A DNA stretch of 64,000 bases, from positions 35,650,001 to 35,714,000 of the forward strand of contig OZ287754.1 in the NCBI GenBank assembly GCA_965649765.1, in the 5' to 3' direction. Positions 5,961 to 62,164 of this stretch are shown piece after piece; the stretch's first letter is position 1; each line of letters starts with the position of its first letter. The notes under the pieces are model-generated. The model worked only from the letters and a program-made list of their open reading frames with translations. It searched no databases and had not been told where the DNA came from. This stretch comes from Bispira polyomma. Lineage: Eukaryota. Both the position numbers and the translations under genes were made by a program.

Positions 5961-5966
5961 GCCCAA

Positions 5967-6969: not shown

Positions 6970-6977
6970 CTGTAAAA

Positions 6978-10475: not shown

Positions 10476-10784
10476 GGCCTCTAAGTAAATACAAAGAACT
10501 CGTACCTTAGATACCTGCAGATATATGTATAGGGAGGATATAGTGAACTCCAAGAGTAAAATAAGAAGCAATTAAGCCAATTTTGAATTGATACGTCCCT
10601 ATACTAGCGCTCGGTCGAGCATATATTCGCAAGACTCTAAAGTGTGAGTCGACACATAAAACAGCAGCAAGTCCGTGATTCCTTCCTTAGTATGCAGTAT
10701 CTCACAGTAAATCCTTTGGTAACATTCCAGAGTTCATGTACATATAAAAGTCACATTAAAGTGTAAGTATAAAACGTAAAAATA

Positions 10785-15241: not shown

Positions 15242-18200
15242 CAAAATCGGTGACACTTACTCCAAAGAAACTCAGACAGATATGACTTGGCCAGAAACAT
15301 TAAAAAGTCCCAAAAAACTACCACAAGCAACAAATGAAAAGGATTCAAAAGTAGTTTTAAACAAAGTTACATCTTCAAGTCAAACTGAAGCAACCAAATC
15401 ACAAAATGAATCAGTCAAAGTGACAAATAACCAGAGTAAGGTAATTCTTAATAGAAACCTAGCTGTCAAAACTTGAAACAGAAATTCAAAAGGGTCAAAT
15501 GATCTTATTAAACAATATAATAAACAAGATACTCTATACTCAGATGGTGAGGATGATAATGAAATGATGGTTGATCTACCACCACAAAATAATAGAGGAA
15601 GACCCCGGAGTCAAAATTGTAAACAAAATTAAATAATTAAACCAAACCAAAAACACATTATCCAGTGGAACTGTCGTGGCTATAAGCCAAAATTTTGAAA
15701 TTAAACATTTAATTTCTGATTTTAGTCCATACATTTTAGCTTTGCAGAAAACATATTTTAAAGACAACGATAATTACAAATTGAGAGGCTTTGATCACTA
15801 TTGTTTCAATAGTGTTTCAGGAGTTAATGGAAGAGTATTTGGAGGTTGCTCATTATTTGTTAAAAAGGTGTGCCACATGAAGTAATCTCCTTAACTACAC
15901 AGTTACAAGCCGTAGCAGTTAAAGTATCCCTACACAAAACCATAACTCTATGTTGTATATATATTCCACCAAGTTGTACAGTTGCACAGAAAAACTTGGA
16001 TAATTTAGTCAATGAACTGCCACAACCATATATATTAATAGGGGACTTTAATGCCCATAATGAGTTGTGGGGTTTAAATCACTGTGATAGTAGAGGAAAA
16101 AAGATTGAGCATATGTTAGACTCACCTGGTGTTTGTTTACTCAGTGACTATTCTCCTACATATCTACATCCAGCTACAGGATCTTTAACTGCAATAGATT
16201 TATCAATATGTTCCAGTTCAATATTCCTTGACTTTACTTGGAAAGTTCACAGTGACCAATGTGGTAGTGATCATTTCCCAATTCTAATCAATATAGTTAA
16301 AAATATACCAAGAGACAATGTACCCCGTTGGAACATTAAAAAGGCTGATTGGGTAAAATATCAGCTACATTGCTCACTTGAAATTAATAGACATACATTT
16401 CAAAATTTGATTGACAAGTTTCCTGTTTTTATGAGTAAATTGAATGACACAGCCACAAAAAGTATACATAAAATCCTCAGGACAGTCCACTGGTAGTTTT
16501 AAACCATGGTTTAATGATGAATGTAAAAGGGTCCTAAAAGCTCGTCAGAAAGCCCTAGATAAATGCCGAATAAATCCAACATCGGCAAATATAAATGAAT
16601 ATAGAAACTGCAGGGCTAAGGCTCGGAGTGTAATTAAAGCAGCCAAAAAAAAACTCCTGGAAGGAAAACATATCGAAACTAAATACAAATACTTCAGCCA
16701 ATAAGGTATGGAAAATGCTTAGGAAAATAAATGGGAGGCAAAATAATACATCAGTAAGACATCTAGTAAACACTGATGGAACTAAAATAACAGAAAGAGG
16801 AGATATAGCAAATATGTTGGCTCAAGAAATAAGCAAAAATCCAGCAGTAAGAATTACTCTGTTAAGTTTCAGAAATATCAGGAAAAGGCTGAAAAAGAAA
16901 AGCTTAATTTTGCATCAAGAAACCATGAAAATTATAACATGGAGTTCAATATATCAGAATTAATAGATGCATTAAAAAAGTCTCATGACACAGCCACAGG
17001 GCCTGATGAAATACATTATTAATTACTTGAGCATTTACCAAGGGATTCACTTATGGTACTATTAGAAATATTTAATGAAATATGGATAACTGGTGAAATC
17101 CCTGAATGCTGGAAAGAAGCAACTATTATACCCATTCCTAAGCCTGGTAAAGACCCACAAAACCCATCCAATTACTGTCCCATATCTTTGACGAGCTGCT
17201 TGTGCAAGACCATGGAAAGAATGATAAATGCAAGAGTGGTTTGGTTTCTTGAAAAAAAACAACATTTTAAGTGTACATCAAAGTGGTTTTGGAAGGTAGA
17301 ACGACAACAGATCAATTAGTTCAACTTGAATCTTTAATTAAAGATTCATTTTTAAAAGGCAACCATGTAGTTTCAGTATTTTTTGATCTGGAAAAAGCAT
17401 ATGATACTGTTTGGAAATATGGTGTTGCCAGAGATTTGTATAAGGTAGGGCTTCGTGGTAGAATTCCTGTTTTTATTCAGAATTTTTTATCCAATAGAGT
17501 TTTTAAAGTTTGTCTAGGATCAGTTTATTCAGATATGCACAATCAAGAAATGGGTGTTCCTCAAGGAAGTATCCTTGCTGTTACTTTGTTCATTTTAAAA
17601 ATCAATAGCATAAGTGATATTATTCCATCCAACTTTGAAAAGTCTCTCTTTGTTGATGACCTTTCAATAACATATAGCTCAAATAATGTGGCCTCTATAG
17701 AGAGACAATTACAGCTATGTCTGAATAAAATTGAAAAATGGGCTGATGAAAATGGTTTTAAATTTTCTAAAACTAAAACAGTATGCATGCACTTCTGTAA
17801 CAAAAGAAGACTCCATCTAGATCCTACATTGACATTATATGGCACTCAGATACCTGTAGTAACACAAACAAAGTTTCTTGGCATTATACTTGATAACAAG
17901 TTGAATTTAAAGCACATATTGACTATGTGCGTAAGAAATGTGATAAAGCAATGAATTTATTAAAAGTAGTCTCAAAAATGGATTGGGGTGCCGACAGAAG
18001 TGTACTACTAAGGATGTATCGATCTTTTGTTAGATCAAGTATGGAATATGGTTGTGCAGTTTTTAGCTCTGCCCGTAACTCTTATTTGAGAAAATTGGAA
18101 CCCATTCAAAACCAGGGCTTAAGAATATGCCTTCAGGACTTCTCCAATGCAAAGCTTATATGTAGAAGCTAATGAACCACCATTATACCTGAGATTTCAT

Positions 18201-18722
18201 AAACTGTGTGTTCAGTATGCAATAAAGTTGAGAAGTAATCCTCAAAATCCAACCTATGAAGTAGTATATAATCCTCAGTATCTTCTTCACTGCCACAAAG
18301 TAGCATGGCTAGTCAGCCGCGGAAATGCTATACTTTACTGCACTTCTATTTTCAAACTACTTGCTTATCACAGTCACTTCTCACCCCAACGCTGCATTCA
18401 GATAACACCTCCACTCTCCATTTCCCGCCTTTCTTATATTCTCACTGATAAGTCAGAAGACAAATCTCTCTTACTCTCCCCAGCACTTTGGCGCCCTTTC
18501 TATGATAAGCTCATTATTAAGTCAGAAATCAAACTAACAACATCAAAAATCTTAAGCTATCAGCGGCCATATTGGAAATTTTTATACATTATCACAAAAA
18601 TTTTTTATACATTATCACTAAAAATGCTTAAGTGTTTATTATTTTACAAAATTACAACAAGTTTCACACAGAGGATAATACTGTGCATCTTTTAAGCTAA
18701 TTTGTGTGGATATTACTTAAAA

Positions 18723-19905
18723 ATGGGTAGAGGAAAAAAAAAACTCTATTGAAACAGCCTCATGTACTAGATGTGAAATCTTTCATACACGACCAGTAGG
18801 AAATCGCTGCAAACGAACCACAGACACAAGAGATGATGGTCTTCTCCAGCCTAGTTTTGATAGTGATGATCAAAGCAGTGTTTCTGAAGCAAGTGGCCAA
18901 GTTAGCAGTGAAAAATTCTATCGTGAGGCATACACCACACAGCAGAATATGATGGAAACCCTGTTATCTACAGTCTCCAAGCTACAAGAAGACGTTTCAG
19001 ATCTCAAATTTGGAAAGATGGAGACCAACCGTGTGTCGCCTCATAACGCAACCCGAGATCCTCACACTTCACTAGGACTTCATGACAGTCAGAGAGATCA
19101 CACTGCCAGCGCGTTCGCAACTCATCCTCTCGCCACAGATTCTCCCTCACGTCACCTCACTAGTTCACAGAGCCGGTATGATCACGAAGCCACTCAACGT
19201 GCGTTCAAAGATACCATTCTCCCGACTCCCGAAGTGCTGAAGCAGTCGTCCCTCATACAGAACGAGGTCTCCAAACGACTAGTGAGATATGAAGCCTGGG
19301 CCACAGATGAGAGCATTCAAGGTAAGCTCACTACCAAGCGAAAATCTGGGCGCTATAATACCTCTGAATTATGTGTATCTGACCCCATGAAGCGGTGGCC
19401 GAACGAGGCCTGCTTATCTGGTGTTAGCAAAAAGCGTGTATCTTTTGATGAATTGTCAGTCTCACAGTTCGCTGCTGGCCAGATCCAAAATATTCTTGAG
19501 GTTAAGAATCCTGATATTTCACGAGCCATGCTCTCCCAACTAGCAGACACCCTCAAAGATGCCTCCAACATCTCTTGGGAGATTGCTCGTGGAGCATATG
19601 CCAGTAATATGCATGATATTGAAGAGGGTCGTTTGAGTTGGATGAACGACACAAAATGGAATATGAATCGGCTTTCTTATTCTCAAGCCCTCATATCCCG
19701 TACTACCACACCTTCGACTAGTTCGTTTTCTGCTTCATCTTCAAACAAAAATGAAATGCCTTGCAGGCGTTACCAAAAAAATGACTGCCAACACCAGAAA
19801 GATCATGAGGGCAATAGCATTACATCTCGACATATCTGTGCCAACTGTTTTCGACTACTCACCTTAAGTCCACTTCTGATGTTGTTATTAACCATTGTGT
19901 GCTGA
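18723..19905 (+). pseudogene. Gag-like ORF1 of element 2
   Basis: N-terminal CTRCEIFHTRPVGNRC finger, WPNE, SFDELS, SWEIARGA, C-terminal CRRYQKNDCQHQKDH..HICANC; one early frameshift. Confidence 0.85.
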
Positions 19906-22575
19906 CAGGAAGTTGTGATTTAACCAGTGGTACTAATAAGCAAATTTGTAAGAAAAACAGTTTTAAGAATGATTTCATAAATAATTTTAGTTGTCAACTT
20001 AATGAGTCAATTACTCAATTGAGTTATAGTGATGCCAGTAAGACATCTCAAGCATTACCTGGCAGTGTTTCCCTTAATGACTTATGCAGACAAGAATTGC
20101 CTGTTAAAGTGAACGTTATGAACTCTGTTCAGTGTGATAATTATGGTCAAAAACCATCAACTGTCTTTCATACAGTAGACGTTTATATTAGCACCAGTAA
20201 TTTTAAGTCTGATTGTCTAACTTATTGCTATATCGTTTGTCATGATGAGTCATGTATTTCAGCTGTATACAAATGGACTTATGGCCTAAATATGTGGTAC
20301 TTACAACAAACTCCCTATACACTGGATCACATATGGCCATTATCCTATGTGAACACCACTTGTACCACAACACTACGTCACACTCAACCAAATCAGTCAA
20401 AAAACCGTGCAAAACATAATGTGGCACATACACACAAAAAATTTGGACAAACTTTCTATTATACAGATATCATTGACAAAATTTGCAAATCAAATCTTCA
20501 ACACCAGAGCAATTCAGATTGTAACCATCAAGCCCACCTACCCCTTGAGCATCAAATTAATCAAGGTAATGCACTAGTGCATAATCACAAGTTTATGAGT
20601 CAAAAACCTATATTAGTGCAAAATGAAACGTCTATGATTCAAAAACTTATATTAGTGCATAATGGAAATTCTAGGATTTAAAAACCTATATTACTGCACA
20701 ATGATACTTCTGTGATACAAAAACCTATATTAGTGCACAATGAAGATTCTATTATTCAAAAACCTACATTTGCGCATAATGATGACATCATGATTAATGA
20801 CATCTTACCACTTCAATCATCAGACACTAATGTGGACAATGTCACACATGAATCCTGTCTTATTTCTAGAGACAGAACTTGTGGTTTCATACCACACAGA
20901 CAGAACAGTTTTAAATTTGTGGGTCCAGACAGACAAGAAGTTCTTATAAATTCTTATGACAAACTCATTGAGATTGCAGACATTGTTAAGAACTCTGGAT
21001 TTCCCAACTATAAACAAGCCAGAATACCGCTTAAGAGTACTCTCAAAGTGGAATATTGGAAGAAATACCTGACAGATTATCCTGACAACATCATATTACA
21101 ATATATTGAATCTGGATTTCCAATTTCATTGTATGATAGAGATAGACTGACAGTCAAAAATATTAAGAACCATTACTCAGCAAAAACTTTTCCAGAAGCT
21201 GTGGACAGATATTTTGTCACAGAACTCGAACGAGGCACCCTAGTGGGCTCAGCTACTTCTGACCTTCACCCTGATATACACTGCTCTCCACTTTTGACTG
21301 TACCTAAAGACACTGACAAGCACCGTCTTATATTAAATCTTTCTCACCCAGCAGGCTACTCTGTAAATGACTGTACCATTAAGTCAAAGTACGACACAAT
21401 CGACTTCACTTTGAAATTACCCACTATTGACCAAATAACTCACAAAATTACGGATATAGGACCTAAGGCGACCTTAGCAAAGGTGGATGTTGCGCACGCA
21501 TTTAGGAACCTAAGAATAGATCCTTATGACTGTTTGAAGCTGGGTTATATATGGAAAGACCAGCGTTTTATTGACTTAAGTCTGACTTTTGGTCTCACTT
21601 ATGGTACTGCTGCTTTTATGATGACCTCAGTTTGTGTTACTTACATCATGAAACAAAAAGCTTTCACAGTTATGAATTATAAAGACGATTTTTTGCTCAT
21701 AGAACACAAAGATAAGGCCACCTTAGCCTACGAAACTTTACAACAAATACTAACAGACTTAGGTCTTCCTATTAACCCCAGTAAGTTAGTACCTCCCAGC
21801 AAGCGGGTCACATGTATGGGCATTGTTATAGACATCCAACAAGAAACCCTCAGTATAGATGAGGAAAAATTCAATTCAATTCACAATACTTGCCTGGAGT
21901 TCAAATACCTGGGGAAAGTTAGGAAACAGAAGTACCAGTCGTTACTCGGCAAGCTACTGTATAGACATCGCTGTATCAAACCTTCTCAGATTTTTATGAA
22001 CAGAATGCTTGCTTTACTACATCAGTCTACAAGTCGTAAAATTATCATTCTAAACGATGAATTTCATAAAGACTTACAGTGGTTCCTGCTTTTTCTAAAG
22101 CAGTTCAATGGTACTTGCAAGTACAGATACTTAAACCAAGATAATGACATTTTATTACAGGTTGACGCCTGCTTATCAGGCATAGGGAGCATTTCAGATG
22201 ACAAAGTGTTCAAGGTTGCTCTCCCTTCCTTCATGACTGACAATTTTTCCATTGTACATTTTGAAATGGTCAGTGTTTTAATAGCCTTAAAGCTATGGGG
22301 CCATGAATGGGGAAACAAAAAAATTAAGATACAATCTGACAACATGGCTGTGGTGGCTGTTGTGCAGTCTTCTAAAACCAGAGATGATTATCTCGGGCTA
22401 TGCCTCCGAAATATACGGCAAATCTGTGCTACCAAAAATATTGACTTAAATATCAGCGTTATCTCGGTGGTAAGAATCAATGCATCATGCTGATTGTGTA
22501 AAAACTATTATTATGGGCAACTTCATCTTGTATGACGTCCCAATTGACTTTTTTACCCTTGACAGTTATATATAA
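19899..22575 (+). pseudogene. Pol (RT + RNase H) of element 2
   Basis: 593-aa ORF 20712-22493: HCSPL, KVDVAHAFRNL, LTFGL, NYKDD (mutated YxDD), VDACLSG, SDNMAVV. Confidence 0.9.
20572..20790 (+). repeat. 39-bp coding tandem repeat (QKPILVHNExSxI, ~5-6 units) in the pol N-terminus
   Basis: Repeated caaaaacctatattagtgcacaatga units. Confidence 0.85.
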
Positions 22576-22581
22576 TTACAG

Positions 22582-23548
22582 ACACTCCCTTACCTGCCAC
22601 TTCACTGGTACAAGATGCCTTTAGATGTTTAGAACAGAGTCACAGACCAAGAACACAGAAACAGTATGACAACCAGTTTTGATTGTTTCTGAGTTTCACA
22701 ATTTATTATGACTTACAACAGACTTTTAGTTTCAACAGTAACATAGCTTTCTTTGAATTCTTGACTCAATCAGGAATTTCTCACAAAGTCGTCACAAATT
22801 ACCTCTCAGCTTTAAGACACAAAACCAAAGTGTTGAACATTCAGAACACTGGGCTTTATGATCTTAGATTACCTTTATACACCAGATCCTTAGAGATCAC
22901 TTCCAAGTATACACCCAAGGTCAAAGGGGTTTTTGACTTAACTCAGCTCTTACAAATTTCTCAAGCATGTGAGCAACTTCAGTATCCCGAGTTATTTGGG
23001 ACAGCTTTTCTGTTTGCATTTTTTGGTTTTTTAAGAATATCAAATTTGACCCCCTCTTCAGGTATCCCCTTTGACCCCACTAGACATCTCACAAGGTCAG
23101 ATATCTTATTTGCTCCTCCTAGTATTCACTTAATTATAAAATGGTCCAAAACAAATCAGGCTAGGACTTCTCCTGATATCATACAATTACCTTCACTCAG
23201 CAATTCTTGGCTGTGTCCTGTTAGGGCTGCAAAGTCCCTTTTTCAAAAATATCCACTTGGACCCATGGATCCTCTTTTAGGAAATCCTTCAAACACAGGT
23301 CTTTGCTTAACTGACAACAAGTTAAGATCTATATTAAAACTTATCATTAATCAGCTAAACATTCCCACTGAAGGTCATTCTTTTCAATGTTTCAGGCGCT
23401 CTGGCGCCTCCTTAGCCTTCAACTCCAGCACATACAAAAACATGGGTGCTGGAAGTCAGATGCAGTGTGGACTTACTTAAAAAATACCTCTCACGCTTCT
23501 TCTATCATCCCTACCACCTTTGCTTCTATTGTCTCTTCCAAATTTTAG
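22582..23548 (+). pseudogene. Tyrosine recombinase of element 2
   Basis: AFFGFLRISNL, IKWSKTNQ, CPV, HSFQCFRRSGA, then HGCWKSDAVWTYL after a frameshift. Confidence 0.9.
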
Positions 23549-26099: not shown

Positions 26100-27387
26100 C
26101 CAAATGACCAGCAACTCCAACTTCTGCAGGCACACCTGAACCTCCAACAGGTGATAAGGATTCGCCAAAACCAAGTGGTTCTCTATGTCCATATGAGGCA
26201 GCGTGCGGGAGTGAGGCGCCACAGGAGATTCTGGATAAGGCTGTGATTACTCAGAAGGCCCGTCTATGGCCACCATGAAAGCCTGCTGGCCGAGCTGCGC
26301 CTGGAAGATCTTCAGGCCTTAAAAACCACATCAGGATGGAGCCTGCTCCATTCGATGAAGTGCCGGTGAGGGTGACTCCACTTATAGAGAAGGAGACAAC
26401 CTTTTTACTCTCACCAATCTCTCCTGGCTTAAAGCTTTCCCTGACCTTGAGGTATCTGGCCACTGGAGACTCCTATGCAAACATGCAGTATAACTTCCGT
26501 GTAGCCAAGAACACAATCTGCTTGTTCGTCCCACTGTTGTGTGAGGCCATCTATTCCTCTTACAAGCAAGAAGTCCTGAAGTGTCCAGACAACCCCCAGG
26601 ATTGGAAGCAGAAGGAGGAAGATTTCGCCAAGCAGTGGAACTTCCCACATGCAGTGGGTGCCTTGGACAGGAAGCATGTCTCGGTCCAGTGCTCCCCCAA
26701 CTCTGGCTCATTACATTACAATTACAAGGGTTTTTACTCCATAATAATACTTGAGTTAGTGGATGGAGACTACAAATTTCTCTGGGTAGATGTGGGGTGA
26801 AATGGCAGCTGTTCTGACGCACAGATTTTCAACGGGTCAGACCTCAAGGTAGCCGTGGAGGGGGATACTTTTGGGTTACCACAGGCAGACAAACTACCAG
26901 GTGACGACAGGCCCACACCTTACTTCATGCTGGCAGATGATGCATTTTCTTTGAAGACCTGGCTTAAGAAGCCCTTCAGTGGCAGGCATCTACATCGTGA
27001 AGAAAGCATCTTCAACTACAGATTGTCAAGGGCCAGGCGTGTGGTTGAGAATGCCTTCAGGATACTCGCCAACCGGTTCAGATGTCTTCTGACAATCATG
27101 CCCCAGGTACCACCTCCTGTCACCAGCATCGTGTTAGCCTGTGTGACACTCCACAACATCCTCAGGCACAGATATAGAGAAGTACACCAGGAACTGCTCG
27201 ACCACGAAGATGACCAGCACAGGCTTGTTTGTGGTGCATGGAGGAATGACCAAGAGTTGGTAAACATGAAGATGAACCTAGCTAAAGGTGGGAATGCGGC
27301 CAGTCAGGCAAGAAAGAGGCACTCTACCTGCATCATTACATGAACTTAGTGGCCGTTTCGGTTCCCTGGTAAGAGAATATGATTTAA
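26100..27387 (+). pseudogene. Harbinger (HARBI1-like) DDE transposase, disrupted
   Basis: RRFWI, LSLTLRYLATGDSY, WNFPHAVGALDRKHV, YNYKGFYSI, LADDAF, FNYRLSRARRVVENAFRIL..RF, LHN; in-frame stops and frameshifts. Confidence 0.9.
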
Positions 27388-28393
27388 GTTCCTCTACCTA
27401 ATGTCATTGTAATTGTATTTGACATTGTAATTGTATAGTGATTCAATAGTTCAATAATATTGTAATTTATTAAAGTCAACATTGTAATTGTATAGTGATT
27501 CGATGTTTTTCTCTTTTTCATGTAGGTGATACTATGATTATAGATCTCAAAGGTCTAGATAATGTTGTTCAGTATTACTTTTGTCTTTTACATTTAAAGA
27601 TGTTCCATAAAGCTCCCCACACTCCCAGGTCCAGGTCAATGTCAAGGTCAACATGGGCATATAACTGCCAACATTAACACTTTATTGAGATTCAAACCCA
27701 AGACCTCAGAGATTGTCATTGTTGTCAGTCGGTGGTTTATAATTGGTTTCCTCCTCCAGTACAATTGGTTTCCTCCTCCAGTACAGTTGGTTTTCAATTG
27801 CAGTGCTGTTGGTTAGTGAAAATCTCACCTAAGCATACAATACTCATACATACATACATTCATGCATACAACTCATTCAAAAGATAAATGCAATTTTTAT
27901 GGTTTTTATTATTTTTCTGACATTAACTGAAACAAACGGGCATTCAGTGCTCTGACCTGCAGTTTAAGAGGAATGACTTTTGAGAAAGAAAAACCAGCAG
28001 CTGGGATATATTCTTTTAATCTATACTACACATATATTTAACTAATTAAATTATAAGATATGATATAAGCCCACCTTAGTTAGAACTTTAAGGTTAGTCT
28101 AAGTTCACCTTAGGGGTGACTTCAAAGCGACTACTTTAAGGTTAACGTAACTTTAGTTTGACTTTAAGTTAGCATAATTTAAGGTAACCTTAAGCAATTC
28201 ACATACTTACTGAGACTTTTAGTTTAACAGAATTTAAGATAACATTAACAAAATTACATATTTCAATTGGCCTAAGCCTTACATGCGTCTAGTTAAGGTT
28301 ATTAAAAGTTTTGACTAGAAGGTGACCTTAAAAGATACAATATTTACATTTTATATATTATAGTAAAAAGAGACAATAACCACCAAGGCCCAA

Positions 28394-29390
28394 CTAGGAA
28401 GTAGGAAGTGGGTTGAGAAGAGATTGTAGGGCGAGGGCGACCTGGTCAGAGGCCGAATGGTCCTGTGTGATGTATCGCCACACACATTCAGGGGACCAGA
28501 TGCCCTGACTTTGAATGTCTTGTAATGGAACATGAGCATTAAAGGCTAAGGTCGCCCCAGAGCGACGGCATGTATGAAATGTGATATTTGATTGATCCTT
28601 GTTTAATCTAACTAGAATGTCTTTCAAGTTTTTGCAAATCTTAGTATCTGTTAGGGTGAACCACTGAGTGTCACTTTTGACTTGAAAGAATGGGGAATTT
28701 TTATTTCCCGGTGTTATTGCCAGGAGCGTTTTTAGGGCTTTAACAGGGTAGATAATTTGATGTTGCAGTATGGGTATTTTAATCACTTTAATGGTGTTTC
28801 TGGACTGTAGGGTTTTGGTCCATTTGATTATGATATGGGCACCTGGTGGGGCGAGAATGATATCAGCCCTAGCCAGTTGCTGCAATGGTGAGTATTCACT
28901 GAGCGTGAGGAACCAGATTCGAGATTTGCAAGAAGGAAAAGAAAGCTAATAAGTAGGCTGATTTGTAGACTTGGCTCATATACATGGAGTCACAAACTAA
29001 TGCTATGTTTTGCAATAAATTAATATCAATGACGCCATTCAGTTTGGCCTTAAATGGTGTATGTAACACGAGGGCTTTTTGGAAATACTTGATTCTCTGA
29101 TCCGAGAAGGCAGTTACTTGTACGCCATACAGTGACATATAAGCTTTTATAGCCGAGAAGTAATTTGCCACTGAGGTGTGAGATGTATTATTTACTACTA
29201 GCACTTCCAAAAAGGCCAGAATTGATGTAGGTGTGATATTATATATACAAATGTTTGCAAAACAGCAGAAAGCTAGAAATACTCTGAACATGGCTGTGTA
29301 GGCGTTTTGTGTGGAAGGACGAAAGGCCTGGTGTGCTCGCTTAACTGCGCTGCCTGCTAATTTCAGGACCCAGGTAGGGGAAGCTGACAT
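28394..29390 (-). pseudogene. Tyrosine recombinase of element 3
   Basis: ORFs 28896-29390 and 28394-28885, homologous to element 1 YR; catalytic-region substitutions (LQISN, SQGIW). Confidence 0.9.
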
Positions 29391-29398
29391 TTTTAAGA

Positions 29399-31492
29399 CT
29401 ATATAGACCAGTCTAGTTGTAAGAAGTCATCATGGACCTGTAGCCAGATGGGAATTGTAACTAACCTGTTTCTATCAGTGGTAATAGCCCTAAAAAGCAA
29501 GTCAGCTATATTGTTTCTTTTACCCAGAATATGTACAGTCCTTAGTTCTATGTCTGCTTTTGCAGCTTCCATGAAAATGTTTCTGGTCATTGCAGCCAGA
29601 GTGAGATCATAGGTATTGCCTGAATTTAAAATAGAAACTACTGCTTGGTTATCACAGTGAACTAGTAGTTTTTTGCCCGACCATTGGTCTTTCCAGAGCC
29701 TAATGGATCCTAGAATATTCAACATTTCAAGATGCACAATAGTGTAATTTCTGTAACCCAGAGGGATTTGTTTGGTAAAAATTTGATTGTTGCAACAAGC
29801 ACCCAGTCCTTGCAAACATGCATGTAAGTGTACCTGATCTGTTACTGGTCTATGCTCGAAGAAAGCCATACCATTGAATGATGTCATGAAGGTGTTAAAC
29901 CAGTTTAAATCCTGGTGAATATTAATGTCTAACTTAATGTCTAGAGAATTTTGAGAGCCCCTAAGGGTATCCAACATTCTGTTTAAATAAGCTCCTGAGT
30001 TCTTTACACATTTGGAAATATATAATAATGAACCAAGTAATGATTGAAGCTATCGTTTAGTACAACTTTTCTTGGTTCTCCAACCTTGACATATTTGTTT
30101 TATTTCATCCAATCTGTCATCCGGAATCGAAACAGTAAAGTCTTCAGTATTGACTAACACTCCAAAGCAGATTACCTTGGTACTAGGGGCCACTTCTTTC
30201 TTTTTGCTCATTGCAAAACCTAATTTACCAAATATTTCTTTTAATTTCTCAAATGATTCAAATATTTTGCCAGGCAGACCGTATTTGACGTCATTGATAA
30301 AATTTATGACATCATGACCCTGTGACGTCATGATGAGCCGAATCGCGTCACTGAGCCTTTGAAAAATTGCACTTCCGTGGCGATAGCTGAACGGAAGACA
30401 CGTGTCAATATGGTAGTCATTTAACTGTAAGCCTAATAGATCATAATCGGCTGGGTCAATTTTTACGTGCCTAAAAGCACGACTGATATCTAGTTTATAC
30501 AAAAGCGCCCCTTTGCCTAGTTTAACCACGTTTCTTGTGATGTCATCGACCGTGGGCAATGTAAGTATGAACGGTGTTTCCAGATACTAATCTTTATTTA
30601 TGGCTGAGTTTACTGCATGCCCTTGTGGGCAACTTAGATCAATAATCACTCTTCTATGTTTAGCTTCTGGTTTAGGGCGCGTCGTGAATTGTGACATGTG
30701 CAGTTCGGATAAGGGGGGGTTCCTTGAAGGGACCAATAATCGCCCCGAATTCTTTCTCTTCTTTCAAATAAGCTTTGATGTCGTCTTGAAACTGGGTAGC
30801 TGAACTATGATTATCATCTTTGTTCTCAAGGGGGACAATTTCTGTTAAAGTCTAAAGGAAAACCAAATTTGAGTAAATGGATAAGTTGGGTTTCCCAGTA
30901 ATCACCCAATAGCTTTTCCCATTGTAAGTCATGCAGTTGTGAAGCCACTGGTATTTGGGCTCCCAAGAAATTTGGACATTTTTGTTTTTTCACTAACTTA
31001 TGTAATTCAAGAGGATCGTTTGAGTGTGAACTTGCCTTTACTTCATTGTCGCTTAAGTGTGAACTTGCCTTTACCTCAGGGAGTTTTAGCTCACGTAACG
31101 GAATGAAACCAAATTTTTCCTTATTCTGCTTGTTCCACTTTTGGAACAAAGAATTGCCTTCCACTTTATCGACTACCTCTCTGTGTTTTCTTTTTACCAT
31201 ATTCCAATACATTTCTATTTACATCTGAGCGACATTTGGAGGGCTGTTTGTGGCCTGAATGTGCAACTTTTACATGAAATTTCTCTCTATTTCTGTTACC
31301 AAAGTTCTGTTTTACAACCTGGGCATACGATTTGTTATTGAACCTGGTCCAGTCGGCCCTCCAGTGGTTGCTACACAAATTTAATACATTTGATTTATTT
31401 ACAACTCTACCAGAACAGTATTGTTTATGATCATTAAAGATTTTTCTGTAATTTTTTGACACTGCTGTACTGCAGTGCCCTACTCGTTTTTT
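29399..31492 (-). pseudogene. Pol (RT/RNase H) of element 3
   Basis: KLDISRAFRHV, NFIND, HCDNQAVV, LDWSI*. Confidence 0.88.
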
Positions 31493-32530
31493 ACACTACT
31501 TTCACCAAATTTAACTGTTGAGTTTCTATGATGGTCCTTAGAGGCATGTGAGAATTTCTTACCAAAAGTATGGCAAGTGGCACAAATGTGCAGATAAGTC
31601 TACCCTTTGGTTTCATGATGTATCTTATGAGGACATGATCCTTTCTGAAAATACTTACAGGGAAAGCCCTTTTCGTTACTTTTTTGCCTATTCGAACCTT
31701 GATATGCGGCATTACCCCCTGTATTGACCACTTTCTGAGCATGAGCCCTTCTGATCCAATCAATTTTTGCAGTTCCATCCCATGAAACTTTCCCCTCTTC
31801 CAAGCGACAAAGCAAAACAGCGTGGCTGCCTTTGGCTGCCGGCCATGAAATATCGTTACAATCATCCATCAAATCTTGAGCATATTCTAGCATAGCATTT
31901 TTGATTTCTATGTTCTTCTCATCCCTGACTATAGAGCCAAAGCCAGATACCCACTGTGTCATCGAAAGGCTGTCTTAGGTGGTTCTAGATTTTGTAGTGC
32001 CGCCAAGAATATGATTTTGTGTCCATGCCACCTAACGCTTAACCCAAACAGTTTTGGATCCGCCCCTTTGGGATTTGAAGTTACCTTTGTCTGTGAGTCC
32101 GGCGAGGTCTCGCAGCCTTGAATCCACTGCTTGCTGTAAGTAGTCTGACGTCTTGAGGGTGGTTAGTGAAGGCACCAGTATGTCGTCTGTCTCTGACATA
32201 GGTAGGGGTGCTGGCTGAGCCGTCATCACAGGAGTTGTGGCAGGTACTATGGGCTGCATAGACGTGGCTGGAACAGGAAACAGGGTTAAAGCGGCTGCTC
32301 CTGCAATTTACAACACTATTTCTTTCTGATTGTTTGACACGTTTCTCCATAGTCGACATACGACCACTTAGTCCTTTAAGTTCCTCTAGAATACAGAGAT
32401 TTATAGCCGCAGTAGCAGTGTCATTCTGTTCATTAGTGTCAGTTTGTTTAGTAAACGGACAATTGTCATTAATGGGTTTTTTATGACTATTTTTGCACGC
32501 CCGACAGTCATAATGGGCACGAGGTGCCAT
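31480..32530 (-). pseudogene. Gag-like ORF1 of element 3
   Basis: MAPRAHYDCRACKNSHKKPINDNC, KSQRGG, WPAAKGSHAVLLC, CKYFQKGSCPH. Confidence 0.85.
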
Positions 32531-33056
32531 CTTTGCAAATATACAAATACACACAAATGCTTTGGTATGTGCGGATCTTAAGGTTGAAGTTGTTATGATT
32601 TATAAATGAATTGTTGTAAATTTCAAATAATAGTGAAAACAGCCCTCAACCGTAGCCCTAACTAGAGAGCAAGATTTGCATGTGTCAAAGCAAGTTTGAA
32701 CAATAAACTCCAGTCAAGTGCCTGCCAGCTTCACTTTCCAGTCCAGCAATCACTCATTCTCTTACTACAATATATGTGAAGACTCGGTTACATAAAGATG
32801 AATGAAAAGACATACAATGAAAGAGTTATGTAAAAATGTAAAAATAAAGTAAAAATATTTGAAAGTTTTAAGATGGCGTTCTGCCCTTTCAAGTTCTTAA
32901 TTTAAAGTGAGGTTGGGTAGAAATTAGTGGCAAATGTGAGAGAAAGTAGGCCAACTGCTGACGAATTTGTAACTAAGGTCAAGCTAACCAGAATAGTTTT
33001 AGCAATATAATTTAAGGTGTGCACTGAACTCACTAACCCCGTTGGGTTAATTAGGA

Positions 33057-34975: not shown

Positions 34976-36179
34976 CTTGTAATTTAGTTGTTACTGACCT
35001 CATGAGTGTATTAATGTTCATGTACCATCATAAAATCTAATTTCCAAAGTTACCTGTACATTAGGCAGACATTGTCTGCACCAGTTCAACAGACAAAAAG
35101 GCCTTGTTGTCGCCTCCTTGTCGCATTGATGTGGTATTAAGTTCACACTTCAAAGTCATAATCCCTCATAAAAACAGAGACTTATCTTTTATCTGCCTTA
35201 TTGTCCCCTCCATGTCTGGTATTGTCTCCTCTTGTCACCCCTGTGTCACCTATTTGACTTGGTTTTATTCAGTAGATAATAAGCTTACATTTGGTACCTC
35301 ACAAGTGACTAAAATATGAAAAATTGAAATCATGTTGTCACAAATTACTGGTTTGCGTAACTCTGAAGGTATCTAAGAACATGGAGGCCAAATGAAGTTC
35401 ATTCCAATTTATGCAATGTTAACATTTAAATTCATGTTTAGGACACTACAGGGTACCATATAAATATCAAGTTGGAGTTATGTGTTGGAGGGGTGTGTGC
35501 CAACGGTAGCCCACGCCCTATAATACTTGCAAATATATCTCAGTCCAACATATAAATATTGTGTGTATAAAAGTTAGCATAGAGGAGTTCATACCTTTGA
35601 TTATGTGTTATAGATCTGTTGAAATTAAACCTGTACTTTGTAATGTGGACGTTACTTAAGTAAAGGGTATTTCAAGCAGCAAACACGCACCTAATATACA
35701 TGAAATGAAGGAGTTGTGTGGTGGTGAAACGCCTTGGTTTTTGCTAGATTCTTGTGATTATGGCGCATAAATGACTTGACACCACTTAAAGGATACAGCA
35801 CAGTCGTTATCCTACCAACAAAACCAGTCCTTAAAAGTATAACGAAACTCAAAACTTCTTTCGAACAGACGGTAGGAAGTTAAGCCATTGCACATGGAGA
35901 TAAATAATGCACTTGTTAATATTTGTTCTAGAAGATATTGCAATGTCGAAGACCAAATGAACAAATCTGAGTTTTAATATCCACACCGCTTATTATTACT
36001 GAACATTTCGAAAGCACTTCAACTATAGAAAGCTCCAAGTGCTGTACAATGTTATAGCAAATAGTCAATATATACAAGATTTGTACAAGATATATTAAAA
36101 ATTATAAAAAGGAGATTTTGTCCCAATGCTATATAACAATGTTTTCAGTGTTTTTTTTTTAAAATTCCGTAGGAAGTCT

Positions 36180-36868
36180 ATGTCCTTTCAGGTAACCTAT
36201 TCCATAACTCAGGAATACAATTTTCAAAACATCTGTCTATGAACTTTGACTTAGTGCTTGTTTAACAAAATTGAACACCACAAGAGAAGCAGGTGTAGTG
36301 AAAGGAGAACTTGAGTCGGAGATCTGTCAGATAAGACAGGGATTGTCCCTTGATAGAGTTAAAGATCATAACTAGGTTTATGAATAGGATTCTCTTCCAG
36401 TTCGGAAGCAGAAGTAATACTTTAGGTTTGTCTTCATTCAATTGGAGCATATTAGCCAACATCTACTTTAAATATAAAGAATGCAATCTTCTAGATAAAT
36501 ACAATTCCCTTTCGTATCACTATATAGTTTGGAACTAAGATATAGTTGTGTGTCTTCAGTATAAAAGTGATGATTCATCCTGCGCTTCTTCAAAATATCT
36601 TCCAAAGGAGTGATACATTGTAAATAGAATTGATCTCAACACTGTGGAACACCAAAACAAAAAGTAATTGACTGAGAAAAATACCCCCCATCTTGACCGT
36701 CTGAGCCCTGCCTCTGATGTCTAATGCTGACCAGTAATGCCAAAACGCTTGTCCATAAGGGAAAGGAGAATATGATAATCTAAAGTATCGAAGGCTGCAC
36801 TAAGGTCAAGAAGCACCAAACCAACCATGCACTTATTGTGAAGGCACAAGAGAATGTCATTTTAAAAA
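36180..36868 (-). pseudogene. L2/Crack-type LINE RT fragments
   Basis: Minus strand NDILLCLHNKCMVGLVLLDLSAAFDTLDY, YHSFG..FEEAQDE..FY.EDTQLY, MLANMLQLNEDK. Confidence 0.75.
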
Positions 36869-37238
36869 TTGGTCTTCCATGTTTGCAGTGTGTTATTTTG
36901 TTGCCGACCATGGGTTTATGTAGCAAAGACAACAAATATGTTCACTTTGTTAGGATCATTGTTGTTGTTGGAAATGGCTTGGATAAGCTATAGCTTAATG
37001 TCCTGAAAAGCAATTAAATTATATGTTCTTCATCACATCATTTTTATTCCATAGTAAAAATTAACAAAGGAAAAAACATATATCAGTAGCAATCTGTACC
37101 ATGCTTTAATTAATTGAGTCACTAAATGTCTTGAATTTATATTATATGTGAATCCAAGTTGAAAGTTAAGCCAATTACACTTTGAAACATGATGCAAAAT
37201 GCTAACTGTTTCATTGATAAAACACTGGAATCTTCTTA

Positions 37239-37282
37239 TCACTTCTTGCCGTGTCCATTCCAGTCAGCTATCTTTTTCATCA
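37239..37282 (-). CDS. DH31: DH31 alternative terminal exon b: VMKKIADWNGH-GKK*
   Basis: ctaat branch-like site and tttatctatgttttag| phase 1; same 44-nt coding length as exon a; amidation signal GKK; AATAAA at 37048-37043. Confidence 0.8.
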
Positions 37283-38224
37283 CTAAAACATAGATAAACT
37301 GGTTAAAATTAGTTCTGATTTACAAAGACTAGTTTCGAGAATCATAGAAGTATATGTTGTTTTGGGATATCCAATATACAATAATTTATTGTGAAATGAT
37401 CTACACAAGATAACTCTAAATATTATCACAAAAATAATTAAGCGTAGAAATATCATAAATATGTTTAATATTATAGTAGTAGAGGTAATGTACACAATAT
37501 TCATCACATTTAAGTATTCAAAAGCAAAGTGTTAGTTAATACAGTTAAACACTGGGAAGTAGGATAGGGTGTTAAGCAGACAACATACAACACAGATATA
37601 CTAAAGTACTAGCATTGTTAGTTAATATAACTGCGTATCTACAAAGAGGTTTTGTGTATTAGGCAAACAATGTTAAATAGAAGAGATTGTAGCATGTGGG
37701 TCATTTTTACACTATAAGGGATGAGCATCTCTCATATCTAGCAAAGTATCTGTATCAAAAATTGAGATGCTGTTCAGACTGCGCGCCTCTTTGTATTCAA
37801 GCCTGAGACTCCAGACAGGGTAGAGATTTCACAATCTTATATCTAAAATATGTGATGTATAACATCTGCTTAGTTATTGACCGGAGTAACAGATGAAGTT
37901 ATTGTATAAATAACACAGTACTTACCATATATTACTAATTTAGTGGTATCATTGCAAACAACACAACTAGAAATTTGGTCCCGAAAACATTATTCAATCT
38001 GTCAGTGCTAACCACTTTTAGTATAAAATAGGAATAAAAATGGTTTAAAATTTTATTATCGGAAACATAGACTTTAGTTAAAATCACAAATGCTGCAAAC
38101 TTTTAAAATCATAAACACATTTAATTGAGTCTTTGTAATAATAATTCAGGTTTTCAGAATGTTCTGTTGTCCAGATTTCCACAGTATTCATCTAGTGGTC
38201 ACTGATCACATGTACTGGGTGAAC

Positions 38225-38268
38225 TTATTTTCTACCAGGACCATTCCAGTTAGCTGCCTGCTTTAAAG
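38225..38268 (-). CDS. DH31: DH31 terminal exon a: ALKQAANWNGP-GRK*
   Basis: ttacacttgtag| phase 1; amidation signal GRK; AATAAA at 38057-38052. Confidence 0.93.
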
Positions 38269-38312
38269 CTACAAGTGTAAGAAATCAACTTAAATCAAAT
38301 GTTCTAACGTAT

Positions 38313-38850
38313 ACTGTGGTCACACTGAGAAGGTCCGTGTTTACGTTTGCTTCATTTTAAACGTAAGCAAACGGAAATAAACAAAGTGATAATTTGGTAA
38401 AAAGTAGCAAAAAGTTAATGTATGGGTGTATTGTACACATTCTGTACACGTTTGTACACACATTTAACATGTTTTAATAGCCGTTTTAATTAAGTTTGTA
38501 TCCTTAACCACATTTTAAAATACATAAGTCACGTTCTAAACACGTTTTGATCTCATTCTTTTTATGTAAAATATTATTTGAATGTATACATTTTACTACT
38601 GTCCTTTAAATCATATATACATTGAATACGTGTCATACGTTACCCGCACCAACTGTTTCCAAAAACAGTCGAAATGAACTTAAATTTTGAGCAGCATTAA
38701 TTTTGACATTAAGGAACCATCTTACTCACGCATGCTTACATTTACTTAAGAACAATACGTTCACTACGCAAATGCCTACGTTTAACTTGCGTATGCTATT
38801 TTAGACATTTGTTGTACGTGATCGAAATATACGGCCACTGTGACCACGGC
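38313..38850. mobile_element. Harbinger-like MITE in the DH31 intron
   Basis: Imperfect TIRs actgtggtcacactg and cactgtgaccacggc; TSD unclear. Confidence 0.55.
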
Positions 38851-39133
38851 ATAAGTGTCTGGGCTGATAAGATCTTAAAATAGCAACTATGGCTTGTTAA
38901 AATTTTTGCCCTTGAATTCACTTGTTTGGGTCTCGCTATCAAATAGTATTTTGGTAAAAACACAAATTCAAACCATCGATAGCTGATTATATGACCTGTT
39001 TTTATTCCAGTGTAGTCTTTTTATTAGAGTTTGAAAGATGAAAAGTTTACTATAAGCGAGAGTTGGAGTCTAACATTAGCTGAAACTTTCTTTCCAACAT
39101 TTATGAGATATAGTAATTAAGTATAAAGCTCAC

Positions 39134-39207
39134 CCATGAGTTTTGAGCCAACACTGTGGGCTACTCCATACCTGCCCCCATAGCCTGCGTCAAACCTTCT
39201 CTTTTGT
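39134..39207 (-). CDS. DH31: DH31 coding exon 3 (KR and N-terminal 21 aa of the mature peptide)
   Basis: tttccttacag| QKRRFDAGYGGRYGVAHSVGSKLM G|gtgagc; 74 nt, phase 2-1. Confidence 0.93.
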
Positions 39208-44857: not shown

Positions 44858-44947
44858 TGTTGAGTTGAAATTTGTTCTTGGAGTTGATCTACCAAACCTT
44901 CTAATACATCTAAGGTAAGCACGGGATAGTCCACTTCCCTCTTTGAC
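44858..44947 (-). CDS. DH31: DH31 coding exon 2 (RSKR site and acidic propeptide)
   Basis: 90 nt, phase 2-2; acceptor tatgtttacaaag|, donor CA|gtaagt; the junction creates the furin-type site RSKR. Confidence 0.75.
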
Positions 44948-52509: not shown

Positions 52510-52601
52510 CTGGCTACAGAATATGCATTTACAAAACTGAGATGGGATGACACCAGCATACAGCACACGAAAGATGCGAAGATCTTCATATACAGACTCA
52601 T
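52510..52601 (-). CDS. DH31: DH31 coding exon 1 (signal peptide)
   Basis: Acceptor tgtattttacag| (exon starts 52610), ATG at 52601, hydrophobic MKIFASFVCCMLVSSHLSFVNA, donor AG|gtatgt (phase 2). Confidence 0.8.
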
Positions 52602-58459: not shown

Positions 58460-60217
58460 ATTCCTTCCGCCTTCCCAACGATACATCACTTCAATCCTCC
58501 AGCCCCAGGATATAAGGTTTGTAACCTGTTTCATTTTAGTACACTGTCAGAGCTTGAAGTTCTGAAACTCATCAAATCCTCTACTATTAAATCTTGTGAC
58601 TTAGATCCCATCCCAGCAGTTATACTGAGTCAATGTCTTGACATTCTTGTCACACCCATAACAAATATATTAAATTTTTCTCTTCGGGATGGTGTTTTTC
58701 CCACCTGTTTCAAGACGGCAAATGTAACTCCCTTGATTAAAAAACAAGGGCTTGATAAAAACCAGCTCAAAAACTACAGACCGGTGTCAAACCTCAGCTT
58801 CGTCTCAAAAGTCATCGAGAAAGCTGTAGCTAAACAAATTTCTGACCACCTTAATAGACAAAACATTGAAAATCGCTACCAGTCTGCTTATAGAAAATTT
58901 CACTCTACAGAAAGTGCCCTTTTTTCCATCAGCAATGATATCAATCTTGCACTGGACCGCAACGACACAGTGGCCCTCACCCTTCTGGATCTCTCAGCTG
59001 CATTTGACACTATTGATCATGTCCTGCTCTGCGACACTCTCAAGCAGTGGTTCGGTATAAATGGCAGTGTCCTTAAATGGATCAGATCCTACCTTACTCT
59101 TAGGGCACTAAGAATTAAACCAGATGATCACCTATCATCTTCCATAAAGCTACCATATGCAGTATCCCAGGGATCCGTTCTTGGCCCTCTACTTTTCACC
59201 CTTTATACACATCCTCTTAGCACTGTCATCAATAAACACAATATAAAACACCACATGTATGCAGACGACACTCAAGTCTATCTCTCACTCAATCCACAAA
59301 ATGCAAATACTAACATAGACCTACTTGCAGACTGTCTGTCTGATGTCCAGGCATGGATGAACTACTCTGACAAAACAGAATTCAACCTCATAGGAAACAA
59401 GAAAAATAGTGAACTCCTAAAATCTTTGTTTCCCATCTCCCTGCATGGAAAGGACATACTACCTACCCAAAATGCTAAAAACCTGGGTGTCACTTTTGAT
59501 TCAGCTTTTTCATTTGATACTCATTTTGCCAACTTCTGTCGCTCCTGCTATTACCACATACGCGACATCAAAAGAATCAGAAACCACTTGTCCATGGACA
59601 CAGCGATAACTGTGGCAAATGCCCTTGTGAGTGGCCGCCTCGGCTACTGCAATTCTCTCTTGTACGGAGCAAACAAGTCAGGCATTGAAGGGCTCCAGTC
59701 CATCCAAAACTACCTATGTAGGGTCATTTTTCGCCTGGGTTGTCGCACAGACGTCACTCCTTACCTCAAAAAATTACACTGGTTGCCCATACAATCTTAA
59801 ATATTGTTTAAGATTCACGTTACCACTTTTAAGGCTGTAGTCACTCAAAAGCCACCCTACCTTGCCTCCCTTCTTTCCTTCAGTAACCGCAAGAGAGGCA
59901 ACAGACTCTCTGTCACTTCGGTCAGACCAATCAGAAAGGCGGGTTTCAGAGCGTTCTCCATTGCAGCTCCACAGTTATGGAACAGTCTCCCAGTTGACCT
60001 CAGATCAGTTGACACACTTATCGGTTTTAGGAAAAAGCTTAAAACCTATCTTTTTAATCTTGCCTACCCACCTTAGCTTTCCTCGTGCACGCTCCCACTT
60101 CCTTCCTTACGACTTTGCAATTTTCATGGACTTAATGATTGGACTAATTATTCTGCTGTTGCGCTTTAGAAGATGCCTAGCATCAATAAAGCGCGTTAAA
60201 AATCTATAATAATAATA
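58460..60217 (+). mobile_element. 5'-truncated L2/Crack-clade LINE
   Basis: KSCDLDPIP, NYRPVSNLSF, LDLSAAFDT, QGSVLGP, YADDTQ, LHWLP, AAPQLWNSLP..FRKKLKTYLF; (TAA)n tail at 60206-60217. Confidence 0.92.
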
Positions 60218-62164
60218 GATAGAGTGCATACCTCTGCCAATGCAACACAAAATATGGGAACATTCCATCTATATCAATCGGCTAAGACAGTTAATGTGGC
60301 CCATGTCTGGCCATTCCTCCACAAAATGTTAGAGATAAATAGACTTTCTGCCCTACTTTTGGCACATGTGAAACTGGTGTTCACCAATTTTTAGAATTTG
60401 TATCCAATTTCATATATGACAAGTAAAAAGGACATGAGCTAAATAAGTCAATTGTTTTAGAAAAGGTCTTTCTTGTTTTATTAACACAATATACAGCTTT
60501 GATTCCAAAATGAAAGGTCGTGTGATTGTTGGCTTTCATTGCAGTTGCGTGTTATTTATGTTCTTACATTGTCACAATTTTGAAAGGTTGATAATGAATT
60601 ATTACCCTCATTTTTGAGGTTGTAGTGTGAAACATCATTTGGACTGAAGGGTTTCTGCAACTTTTGCAATCTCTAGCCAACTAACTCTGCACTCTCATCA
60701 TTGGATGGCAGAATACAAGAGATTGTAACGTTAAAGTTCGGCTGTTTAATTTTAGTTTTTTTGTCATATAAAGAGTTAGGATGTTAGTAAATGACAAATG
60801 AAAGATCAAAGGGGGCATTAATATGTTTGCTGTCACAATTAAAGCTAAACTGATCCTCAAATTTTAGCTTGTCGTTCATACCCATGTTGATTAGTTAGAC
60901 TTCTGCTACTTTCAATATGACCAGTTTACTTCATGAAATAGAAAAAATACATCCATCAATGCCTTTAATAAACAGCAAGCTTGTTTTCACTGCAACCTGC
61001 GCGATGTCATCAGATTATTGTTACATTTCCTAACAAAGTGGCATTTGCTTGAGAGAATCCTGATTACTGCAGTTTAAGCACACAAAAAGAATAATTATAA
61101 CTCCAACACATCTGAACAGATCCCCATTGACAAGCGGTTGAGGCAAACAGAATTAAGTTAACTGGATCAGACTTGAGTGGTCCTTTTTCACTGAATAGCT
61201 CATCCACGTGGACAATGGTCATTCATAATGGAGGAACATTAGATGGACTATTGATATGCTATTTAGTGTTTTTATGTCATTAGCCTTTCTTAGACTGTCC
61301 TTAATAAGATGATTTATATGTTTGCGAAATGTTGGAGTCATCAATGCCTTCTTGGTAAAGTGGTTCACTTTTTGTTAGTTTTATGGAGAATTTGTAGGAT
61401 GCTCATGTGCAAACAAGAAAACTATAAAGCAGTTTGCTTCGGTACATTTTTAGGGACACAATGCATTAGTTGTTTTTCAGCTGGATAACTGTGGCTGGAT
61501 CTTGGCCCTTGAGTAGGCTAGTGGGCACTCTAGATTTACGGTGGATCAGAATAGACAGAGACAGGGGCTTCTCTACCCCCCGCCCCCCCCCCCCCCCCCC
61601 ACACACACACTTTGGACGGGTGGAGGATTGATTCCTAATTAACTCTTACACTTTTATGTATGTTAGTGGTTTTAAGGTTCATAGTGATGTTCGCATCATG
61701 GACATTAACATTTTAGTTAGGGAGACCTCTGTGTTTTTATATTAACTAAAATTGTATCACATTGCTTAAACTTGCATATAAATAAATCTAGCTAGTTTTA
61801 ATAATATCATTATTGTGTTTTTATTTGTGTTTTTATATTAACTAAAATTGTATCACAATGCTTAAACTTGTATGTAAATAAATCTAGCTAGTGTTAATAA
61901 TATCAATATTGTGTGACCTTTTCATAGACCAGTAACAGACAAACTTTAGAATTAAGTGCACGCCTTTAAGGGATGGCTTTGGACATCTGAACATTACATA
62001 TCTATAAATGTTATTTGTAGTGGGAGTGAGTATATGGACTGGTATAGCATGGAACATGCAATAGTTTGGGGAACAGTCAATATAAAAAATATTCCAATAG
62101 TATATCATCTAGATGACATTTGTTTACAGATTAGTCCTGCTAGACTACAAAATAGCATAGAAAT

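What the first reader, a model, noticed from the sequence alone, without database searches (positions are those of the whole stretch)
37239..39207. DH31 gene with a duplicated last exon: two predicted hormones sharing one N-terminus
Seen: a phase-1 intron cuts the mature peptide after RFDAGYGGRYGVAHSVGSKLM. Two downstream exons ~1 kb apart have the same phase and the same 44-nt coding length, each with its own acceptor, amidation signal, stop and AATAAA: exon a ALKQAANWNGP-GRK* (38268-38225) and exon b VMKKIADWNGH-GKK* (37282-37239). They differ at many nucleotides yet keep A(D/N)WNG-x-G-basic-basic-stop, which suggests selection. Known: DH31 and calcitonin peptides end in a conserved Pro-amide, and vertebrate CT/CGRP arise by alternative 3' exon use. 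Inference: this gene makes a second, His-amidated DH31 variant with possibly different receptor preference. I know of no description of this arrangement.
Basis: partly seen in the sequence, partly recalled or inferred. Interest (0 to 1): 0.9.

Follow-up and report, generated by a model that had tools for sequence, protein, structure and literature searches.

The report
Worm hormone gene, two alternative endings
A worm gene for the calcitonin-like hormone DH31 carries an old, intact second copy of its last exon, so it probably makes two hormones with the same front two-thirds and different tails, one of which lacks the family's near-universal final proline; splicing into the second copy has not yet been shown.

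Summary
Observation confirmed. The window holds a complete annelid-type DH31 gene with coding exons at 52601, 44947 and 39207 and two 44-nt last exons, a (38268-38225) and b (37282-37239). Either gives a 99-aa precursor and a 31-residue amidated peptide sharing residues 1-20.

Exon b looks selected: synonymous sites between a and b are saturated (pS 0.93), replacement sites are not (pN 0.25, p=0.0008), the flanks no longer align, and the motif occurs only twice in 1.035 Gb. The intron inside the peptide is ancestral, but five annotated relatives have one last exon, and no retrieved DH31 ends in His. A second, divergent DH31 gene lies 87 kb away.

Best reading (0.65) is alternative last exons yielding a Pro-amide and a His-amide hormone. 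The mechanism is known from CHH/ITP and, more loosely, CT/CGRP and beetle DH37/47. I found no report of it within DH31. Changed receptor preference is inference.

The parts
52510..52601 (-). Coding exon 1: predicted start codon and signal peptide, phase-2 donor (a 5' UTR exon probably lies further upstream)
   Evidence: Hydrophobicity and donor scan, sequence, frame continuity. Predicted, not transcript-confirmed.
44858..44947 (-). Coding exon 2: KR site and acidic helical propeptide, phases 2/2 (AAG acceptor)
   Evidence: Weak tblastn hit with the propeptide exon of locus L023; frame continuity; same exon position in five annotated relatives.
39134..39207 (-). Coding exon 3: KRR cleavage site and residues 1-20 of mature DH31, shared by both isoforms; phases 2/1
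   Evidence: (83% identity to full-length precursor P0015).
38225..38268 (-). Last exon a, coding part: residues 21-31 ending in Pro, then G-R-K-stop (canonical DH31)
38052..38057 (-). AATAAA 168 nt after the stop of exon a, followed by a U-rich stretch: candidate proximal poly(A) signal
   Evidence: weak by itself.
37239..37282 (-). Last exon b, coding part: residues 21-31 ending in His, then G-K-K-stop (variant)
37043..37110 (-). ATTAAA (37110) and AATAAA (37048) after exon b: candidate distal poly(A) signals
   Evidence: weak by itself.

Best explanation
The gene uses mutually exclusive last exons. SHOWN: a four-coding-exon DH31 gene whose ancestral phase-1 intron splits the mature peptide after residue 20, and an old tandem duplicate of the last exon with an intact acceptor, frame, amidation signal and stop. 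INFERRED: the donor at 39134 is joined either to 38268, with 3' end formation near 38057, or, skipping exon a, to 37282. Both mRNAs encode a 99-aa precursor. KRR cleavage, trimming of the basic residues and amidation from Gly (standard prohormone processing, from general knowledge) give two 31-mers identical in residues 1-20 and different at 6 of residues 21-31. In class B GPCR ligands the C-terminal part docks on the extracellular domain and the N-terminal part activates, so isoform b most likely keeps the activating segment and has altered affinity or receptor range. This last step is the least certain.
For: Synonymous differences 7.5 of 8.1 sites against replacement differences 8.5 of 33.9, Fisher p=0.0008. 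Intron and UTR flanks no longer align (p 0.13-0.73). A simulation with b neutral since duplication reproduced the intact exon plus this divergence in at most 0.1% of runs at any age, while a constrained b matched the divergence in 28-36%. b keeps the ancestral Asp27 that a has lost. A decaying copy of the same exon in another worm transcript shows the opposite signature: 89% nucleotide identity with premature stops (L070). No upstream half-gene remnant lies between a and b. Precedent: CHH/CHH-L and ITP/ITP-L (PMC2841656), whose isoforms act on different receptors (10.1101/2024.02.07.579245). C-terminal residue and amide sit in the receptor pocket for CGRP and adrenomedullin (PMC4504005).
Against: No RNA, peptide or receptor data. 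No second last exon within about 10 kb in Capitella, Owenia, Paralvinella, Ridgeia or Lineus, nor in two metagenome loci with long flanks. No His-ending DH31 among 24 retrieved C-terminal halves (23 Pro, 1 Leu) or in a search seeded with exon b. b alters near-invariant positions A21, A25 and P31. The statistics rest on 14 codons, and the simulation parameters are assumed. Swapping only the last residue did not swap receptor preference for CGRP and adrenomedullin (PMC4504005), and RAMPs are not found in protostomes (PMC12638048).
Confidence: 0.65

Rival explanations
1. Exon b was a functional alternative exon for a long time but is now silent or used only at noise level, and is starting to decay.
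For: Changes at near-invariant residues including P31; no transcript seen; no ortholog of b found.
Against: No disabling change in the acceptor, frame, Gly, basic pair or stop. Under neutrality only about 18% of copies stay intact after 0.1 substitutions per site and 5% after 0.2, so loss of function would have to be recent.
Confidence: 0.18
2. Exon b is what remains of a tandem copy of the whole gene or of a multi-exon unit whose upstream exons were deleted. Selection acted while it was part of that copy; it may or may not have been captured as an alternative exon since.
For: DH31 duplications are common in these worms: a second gene 87 kb away, a tandem three-exon unit giving two peptides in one precursor in L023, and two paralog types in gutless-worm-type loci.
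Against: No exon-2-like or exon-3-like remnant in the 940 nt between a and b. The only borderline match (p=0.035) lies downstream of b, inside a reverse-transcriptase remnant.
Confidence: 0.1
3. Exons a and b are used in series through a weak phase-1 GT inside exon a (just after the Pro codon), giving one longer His-amidated peptide rather than two alternatives.
For: A GT in the right phase exists there (read directly from the sequence), and tandem use of duplicated exons is known in echinoderm calcitonin genes (PMC12638048).
Against: The site (GTAGAA) matches the donor consensus poorly at +4 and +5, and exon a keeps its own amidation signal and stop.
Confidence: 0.04
4. Exon b is a chance match, an assembly artefact or a pseudo-exon that never functioned.
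For: The exon is only 44 nt and it was noticed because it looks intact.
Against: Two pattern hits genome-wide; single-copy region; 61% identity with unalignable flanks rules out an allelic duplicate; neutral simulation at most 0.001.
Confidence: 0.03

Closest known systems
Annelid DH31 (Platynereis dumerilii, Capitella teleta P0017, Urechis P0031, Owenia P0034)
   Same: Cys-free 31-mer after a basic site, near-identical sequence for isoform a, same four coding exons and the same phase-1 intron inside the peptide.
   Different: The five annotated relatives examined as genomic DNA have one last exon, and the named precursors all end in Pro-amide. Here there is a second last exon ending in His. 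Most relatives also have a tail after the basic residues, which is absent here and in Urechis and Owenia.
Crustacean CHH/CHH-L and insect ITP/ITP-L
   Same: An intron interrupts the mature peptide, and a tandem exon duplication supplies alternative C-terminal parts to a shared N-terminus (PMC2841656). This is the closest mechanism.
   Different: Unrelated peptide family (72-78 aa, disulfide-bonded). One isoform is amidated and the other is longer and not amidated. The arrangement is ancient and proven by transcripts and peptides. Here both forms are amidated, equal in length, apparently lineage-restricted and unproven.
Vertebrate calcitonin/CGRP alternative 3' exon use; echinoderm CT1/CT2 splicing
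   Same: Same hormone superfamily; alternative splicing diversifies the peptide; CGRP also lacks the C-terminal Pro (PMC12638048).
   Different: There each exon encodes a complete mature peptide, so only the prepro-region is shared. Here the switch lies inside the mature peptide.
Beetle DH37/DH47, allatostatin CCC and DH31 splice forms (PMC6585902)
   Same: Duplicated or added last coding exons give alternative neuropeptides from one gene, including the DH31 gene.
   Different: For DH37/DH47 and DH31 the alternative exons hold whole peptides, and the beetle DH31 alternatives are not DH31-like.

Membership tests
DH31 (protostome calcitonin-like, Cys-free) | Precursor with signal peptide, propeptide, basic cleavage site and a single C-terminal peptide | tested here: met
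   Predicted exons give a stop-free 99-aa frame with either last exon; the signal peptide is judged by hydrophobicity only.
DH31 (protostome calcitonin-like, Cys-free) | Mature peptide of about 31 residues without the calcitonin cysteine pair | tested here: met
   31 residues between KRR and the amide-donor Gly for both isoforms, no Cys (definition in PMC3890597).
DH31 (protostome calcitonin-like, Cys-free) | Sequence similarity to named DH31 precursors | tested here: met
   Exon 3 is 83% identical to P0015; a profile including window exons retrieves Capitella, Urechis DH31, Owenia and nemertean precursors; compare Platynereis DH31.
DH31 (protostome calcitonin-like, Cys-free) | C-terminal Pro-amide, isoform a | tested here: met
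   P-G-R-K-stop.
DH31 (protostome calcitonin-like, Cys-free) | C-terminal Pro-amide, isoform b | tested here: not met
   H-G-K-K-stop; 23 of 24 relatives have Pro and none His. Isoform b is therefore filed as a DH31-derived variant, not a canonical member.
DH31 (protostome calcitonin-like, Cys-free) | Pfam PF27927 (DH2-like) match | tested here: inconclusive
   The local Pfam copy hits neither the single exons nor the full-length relatives P0015 and P0016; PF27927 is precomputed for the relatives. The joined model was not searched.
DH31 (protostome calcitonin-like, Cys-free) | Activates a DH31/calcitonin-type class B receptor | not testable with these tools
   Needs a receptor assay.
CHH/ITP-type split-peptide alternative exon design (mechanism, not homology) | Intron inside the mature peptide and tandem duplicated downstream exons of the same phase and similar length | tested here: met
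CHH/ITP-type split-peptide alternative exon design (mechanism, not homology) | Both transcripts or peptides demonstrated, with distinct expression or receptors | not testable with these tools
Calcitonin/CGRP-type alternative terminal exons | Each alternative exon encodes a complete mature peptide | tested here: not met
   Exons a and b encode only residues 21-31.
Calcitonin/CGRP-type alternative terminal exons | Proximal and distal terminal exons with their own poly(A) sites | tested here: inconclusive
   Hexamers are present after both exons, but the chance rate is 23% per 200 nt.

The most novel reading that the evidence does not exclude
Exon b is used in a tissue- or stage-specific way and yields a His-amide DH31 that keeps the activating N-terminal segment but docks on a different receptor, for example a second class B calcitonin/PDF-type receptor or the rhodopsin-type DH31 receptor 2 known from Platynereis. 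This would be a splice-built ligand switch inside a calcitonin-family hormone, convergent with the loss of Pro-amide in CGRP.
Probability: 0.25. Interest if true: 0.75.

Novelty: new variant of a known kind. Interest (0 to 1): 0.5.

Why it matters
If exon b is used, this worm has a natural matched pair of hormones with one N-terminal segment and two C-terminal segments. Which of the two lophotrochozoan DH31/calcitonin receptor groups pairs with which peptide is stated as open (PMC8557429), Platynereis DH31 activates both a class B and a rhodopsin-type receptor (same paper), and DH31/CT peptides also activate PDF receptors (PMC12638048). The pair, together with the divergent peptide from the neighbouring second gene, would test directly whether the C-terminal half sets receptor choice in animals that lack RAMPs. 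It also shows that the Pro-amide taken as a family hallmark can be given up, and that standard annotation could miss such 44-nt exons. A specialist would find it a neat new case rather than a new principle.

Tried and rejected
It did not call the stretch human-like and told me to go on with other tools. I went on using these coordinates by reference in other tools.

The joined (spliced) model was not sent to any search tool. Searches were exon by exon, or by alignments with exons as separate referenced rows; joining was done only inside a script to check frame and length.

Alignment A1 misplaced the short exons and was discarded. The exon 2 propeptide gave no BLAST alignment to P0015, so exon 2 rests on phase, position, frame and a weak hit to L023.

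Rejected: haplotype or assembly duplicate; recent duplication (synonymous sites saturated, flanks unalignable); a hidden third gene between a and b (no suitable exon); exon b copied from the second gene (its peptide is closer to a: pN 0.25 against 0.48); AATAAA as strong support. An in-frame-shifted CAG 16 nt upstream of the exon b acceptor would give a non-amidated product if used; it lies very close to the likely branch points and I consider it unlikely, but did not test it. Genome and viral contig scans were not run, since a short pattern would give mostly chance hits. Ten or fewer paper searches of an open-access library cannot prove that the arrangement is undescribed.

Full report
Observation. 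On the minus strand, exon 39207-39134 encodes a KRR site and 20 residues of a DH31-like peptide and ends at a phase-1 GTGAG donor. Two 44-nt exons follow, a at 38268-38225 and b at 37282-37239. Each has a TAG acceptor, eleven peptide codons, Gly, two basic residues and a stop. A loose scan for such exons over 264 kb of surrounding genome gave 7 hits, of which three are DH31 last exons. The codon pattern shared by a and b occurs twice in the 1.035-Gb assembly and never in the reversed control. The a-b stretch is single-copy. Poly(A) hexamers follow both exons but are common in this AT-rich DNA (23% per 200 nt).

The whole gene. Upstream I found a propeptide exon at 44947-44858 and a signal-peptide exon at 52601-52510. 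With intron phases 2, 2, 1 the frame is open with either last exon, giving 99-aa precursors and 31-residue mature peptides (checked only inside a script, the joined model was not searched). These two upstream exons are predictions. Exon 3 is 83% identical to a full-length precursor from an RNA assembly, and isoform a closely matches Platynereis and Capitella DH31, more than nemertean, brachiopod or chiton DH31. The animal is therefore most likely an annelid (inference; earlier scan notes say the same). A second DH31 gene lies 87 kb away on the opposite strand, tail to tail, with the same phases and its own 44-nt last exon ending in Pro-Gly-Lys-Lys. A genome-wide profile search found no third gene. 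Apart from ORFs that look like mobile elements, I recognised no gene between the two (not examined in detail).

Is exon b under selection? a and b differ at 17 of 44 nt. Synonymous sites are saturated (7.5 of 8.1) and replacement sites are not (8.5 of 33.9; Fisher p=0.0008), while introns and UTRs align no better than shuffles. In simulation, a copy neutral since duplication matched the intact structure and this divergence in at most 0.1% of runs at any age; a constrained copy matched the divergence in 28-36%. The parameters are assumed and only 14 codons are available, so this is a likelihood ratio of the order of a hundred, not proof. A useful contrast is L070, a transcript from another worm with recent internal copies of the same exon: 89% identical at the nucleotide level but broken by stops. 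The test does not exclude an exon that worked until recently. Exon b keeps K23, A26, D27, W28, N29, G30 and the amidation signal, but changes A21, A25 and P31, which are conserved in 23-24 of 24 relatives. That fits either a new function or relaxed selection.

Relatives. The phase-1 intron inside the peptide is ancestral: it is present in all 34 metagenome loci found and in Capitella, Owenia, Paralvinella, Ridgeia and the nemertean Lineus. None of these five has a second last exon within about 10 kb, nor do two metagenome loci with 7-10 kb of downstream DNA. No His-ending DH31 appeared among full-length precursors or in a search seeded with exon b. Duplication of DH31 parts recurs in worms: L023 has a tandem three-exon unit giving two DH31 peptides in one reading frame, and several loci show a second paralog with a divergent C-terminal half.

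Mechanism. The most likely reading (0.65) is alternative last exon use. The proximal choice splices to 38268 and ends near 38057. The distal choice skips exon a and splices to 37282. Standard processing would give two amidated 31-mers identical in residues 1-20. In calcitonin-family peptides the C-terminal turn, last residue and amide occupy a pocket on the receptor's extracellular domain (PMC4504005), so b should alter affinity or receptor range while keeping the N-terminal segment. The same paper shows that the last residue alone did not swap selectivity, and RAMPs are not found in protostomes (PMC12638048), so a receptor switch is a hypothesis. Rivals: a recently silenced exon (0.18), a remnant of a larger tandem copy (0.10), serial use through a weak internal donor (0.04), chance or artefact (0.03).

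Comparison with what is known. Isoform a meets every DH31 feature I could test. Isoform b fails the Pro-amide feature and is best called a DH31-derived variant. It works like CHH/CHH-L and ITP/ITP-L, where an intron splits the mature peptide and a duplicated exon supplies alternative C-termini (PMC2841656), with different receptors reported for the isoforms (10.1101/2024.02.07.579245). Vertebrate CT/CGRP and sea cucumber CT1/CT2, and beetle DH37/DH47 and DH31 splice forms (PMC6585902), swap whole peptides; beetle allatostatin CCC also has a duplicated last coding exon. My paper searches found no annelid DH31 isoforms, within the limits of an open-access library.

Verdict. The feature is real and probably functional. 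It is a new variant of a known kind: new for the DH31/calcitonin family as far as I could find, but with a well-described precedent in another neuropeptide family and without expression evidence. Interest 0.5; about 0.75 if a receptor switch were shown (probability about 0.25).

Noticed in passing
G000:C7:35587676-35600512 (+); L002:1497-1570 and 1997-2040: A second, divergent DH31 gene 87 kb from the first, tail to tail, with four coding exons in the same phases. It gives a 91-aa precursor and a 31-residue Pro-amide peptide with a strongly changed C-terminal half.
   Followed up: partly
L023:4535-6413: In an unidentified animal contig from a metagenome, a three-exon unit is tandemly duplicated so that one reading frame holds two DH31 peptides.
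   Followed up: partly
L070:588-790: A worm DH31 transcript with three internal copies (about 80 nt apart) of the last-exon coding part; the second and third carry premature stops.
   Followed up: partly
L025, L035, L047, L050 versus L029, L034, L042: JGI metagenome loci (from memory, gutless marine worm samples; not verified) show two DH31 paralog types, one with a divergent C-terminal half that still ends in Pro.
   Followed up: partly
window 38131-38121 and 37120-37110 (approximately, minus strand): An identical 11-mer sits at or beside the ATTAAA in the 3' UTRs of both exon a and exon b; chance probability about 0.055. It may be a duplication remnant or a 3'-end element.
   Followed up: partly
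window 36000-36900 (minus strand): Degenerate reverse-transcriptase (LINE-like) remnant just downstream of exon b, recognised by eye from the translation.
   Followed up: no
window 1800-10600, 18900-23500, 28400-32600, 14200-18700, 26300-27400, 58700-62900: ORFs that look like DIRS-type tyrosine-recombinase retrotransposons, LINE elements and a Harbinger-like transposase (recognised from the translations, not tested).
   Followed up: no
P0036, P0037, P0041: DH31-like precursors with a strongly changed N-terminal half but a canonical C-terminal half; P0041 ends in Leu rather than Pro, the only non-Pro ending retrieved.
   Followed up: no
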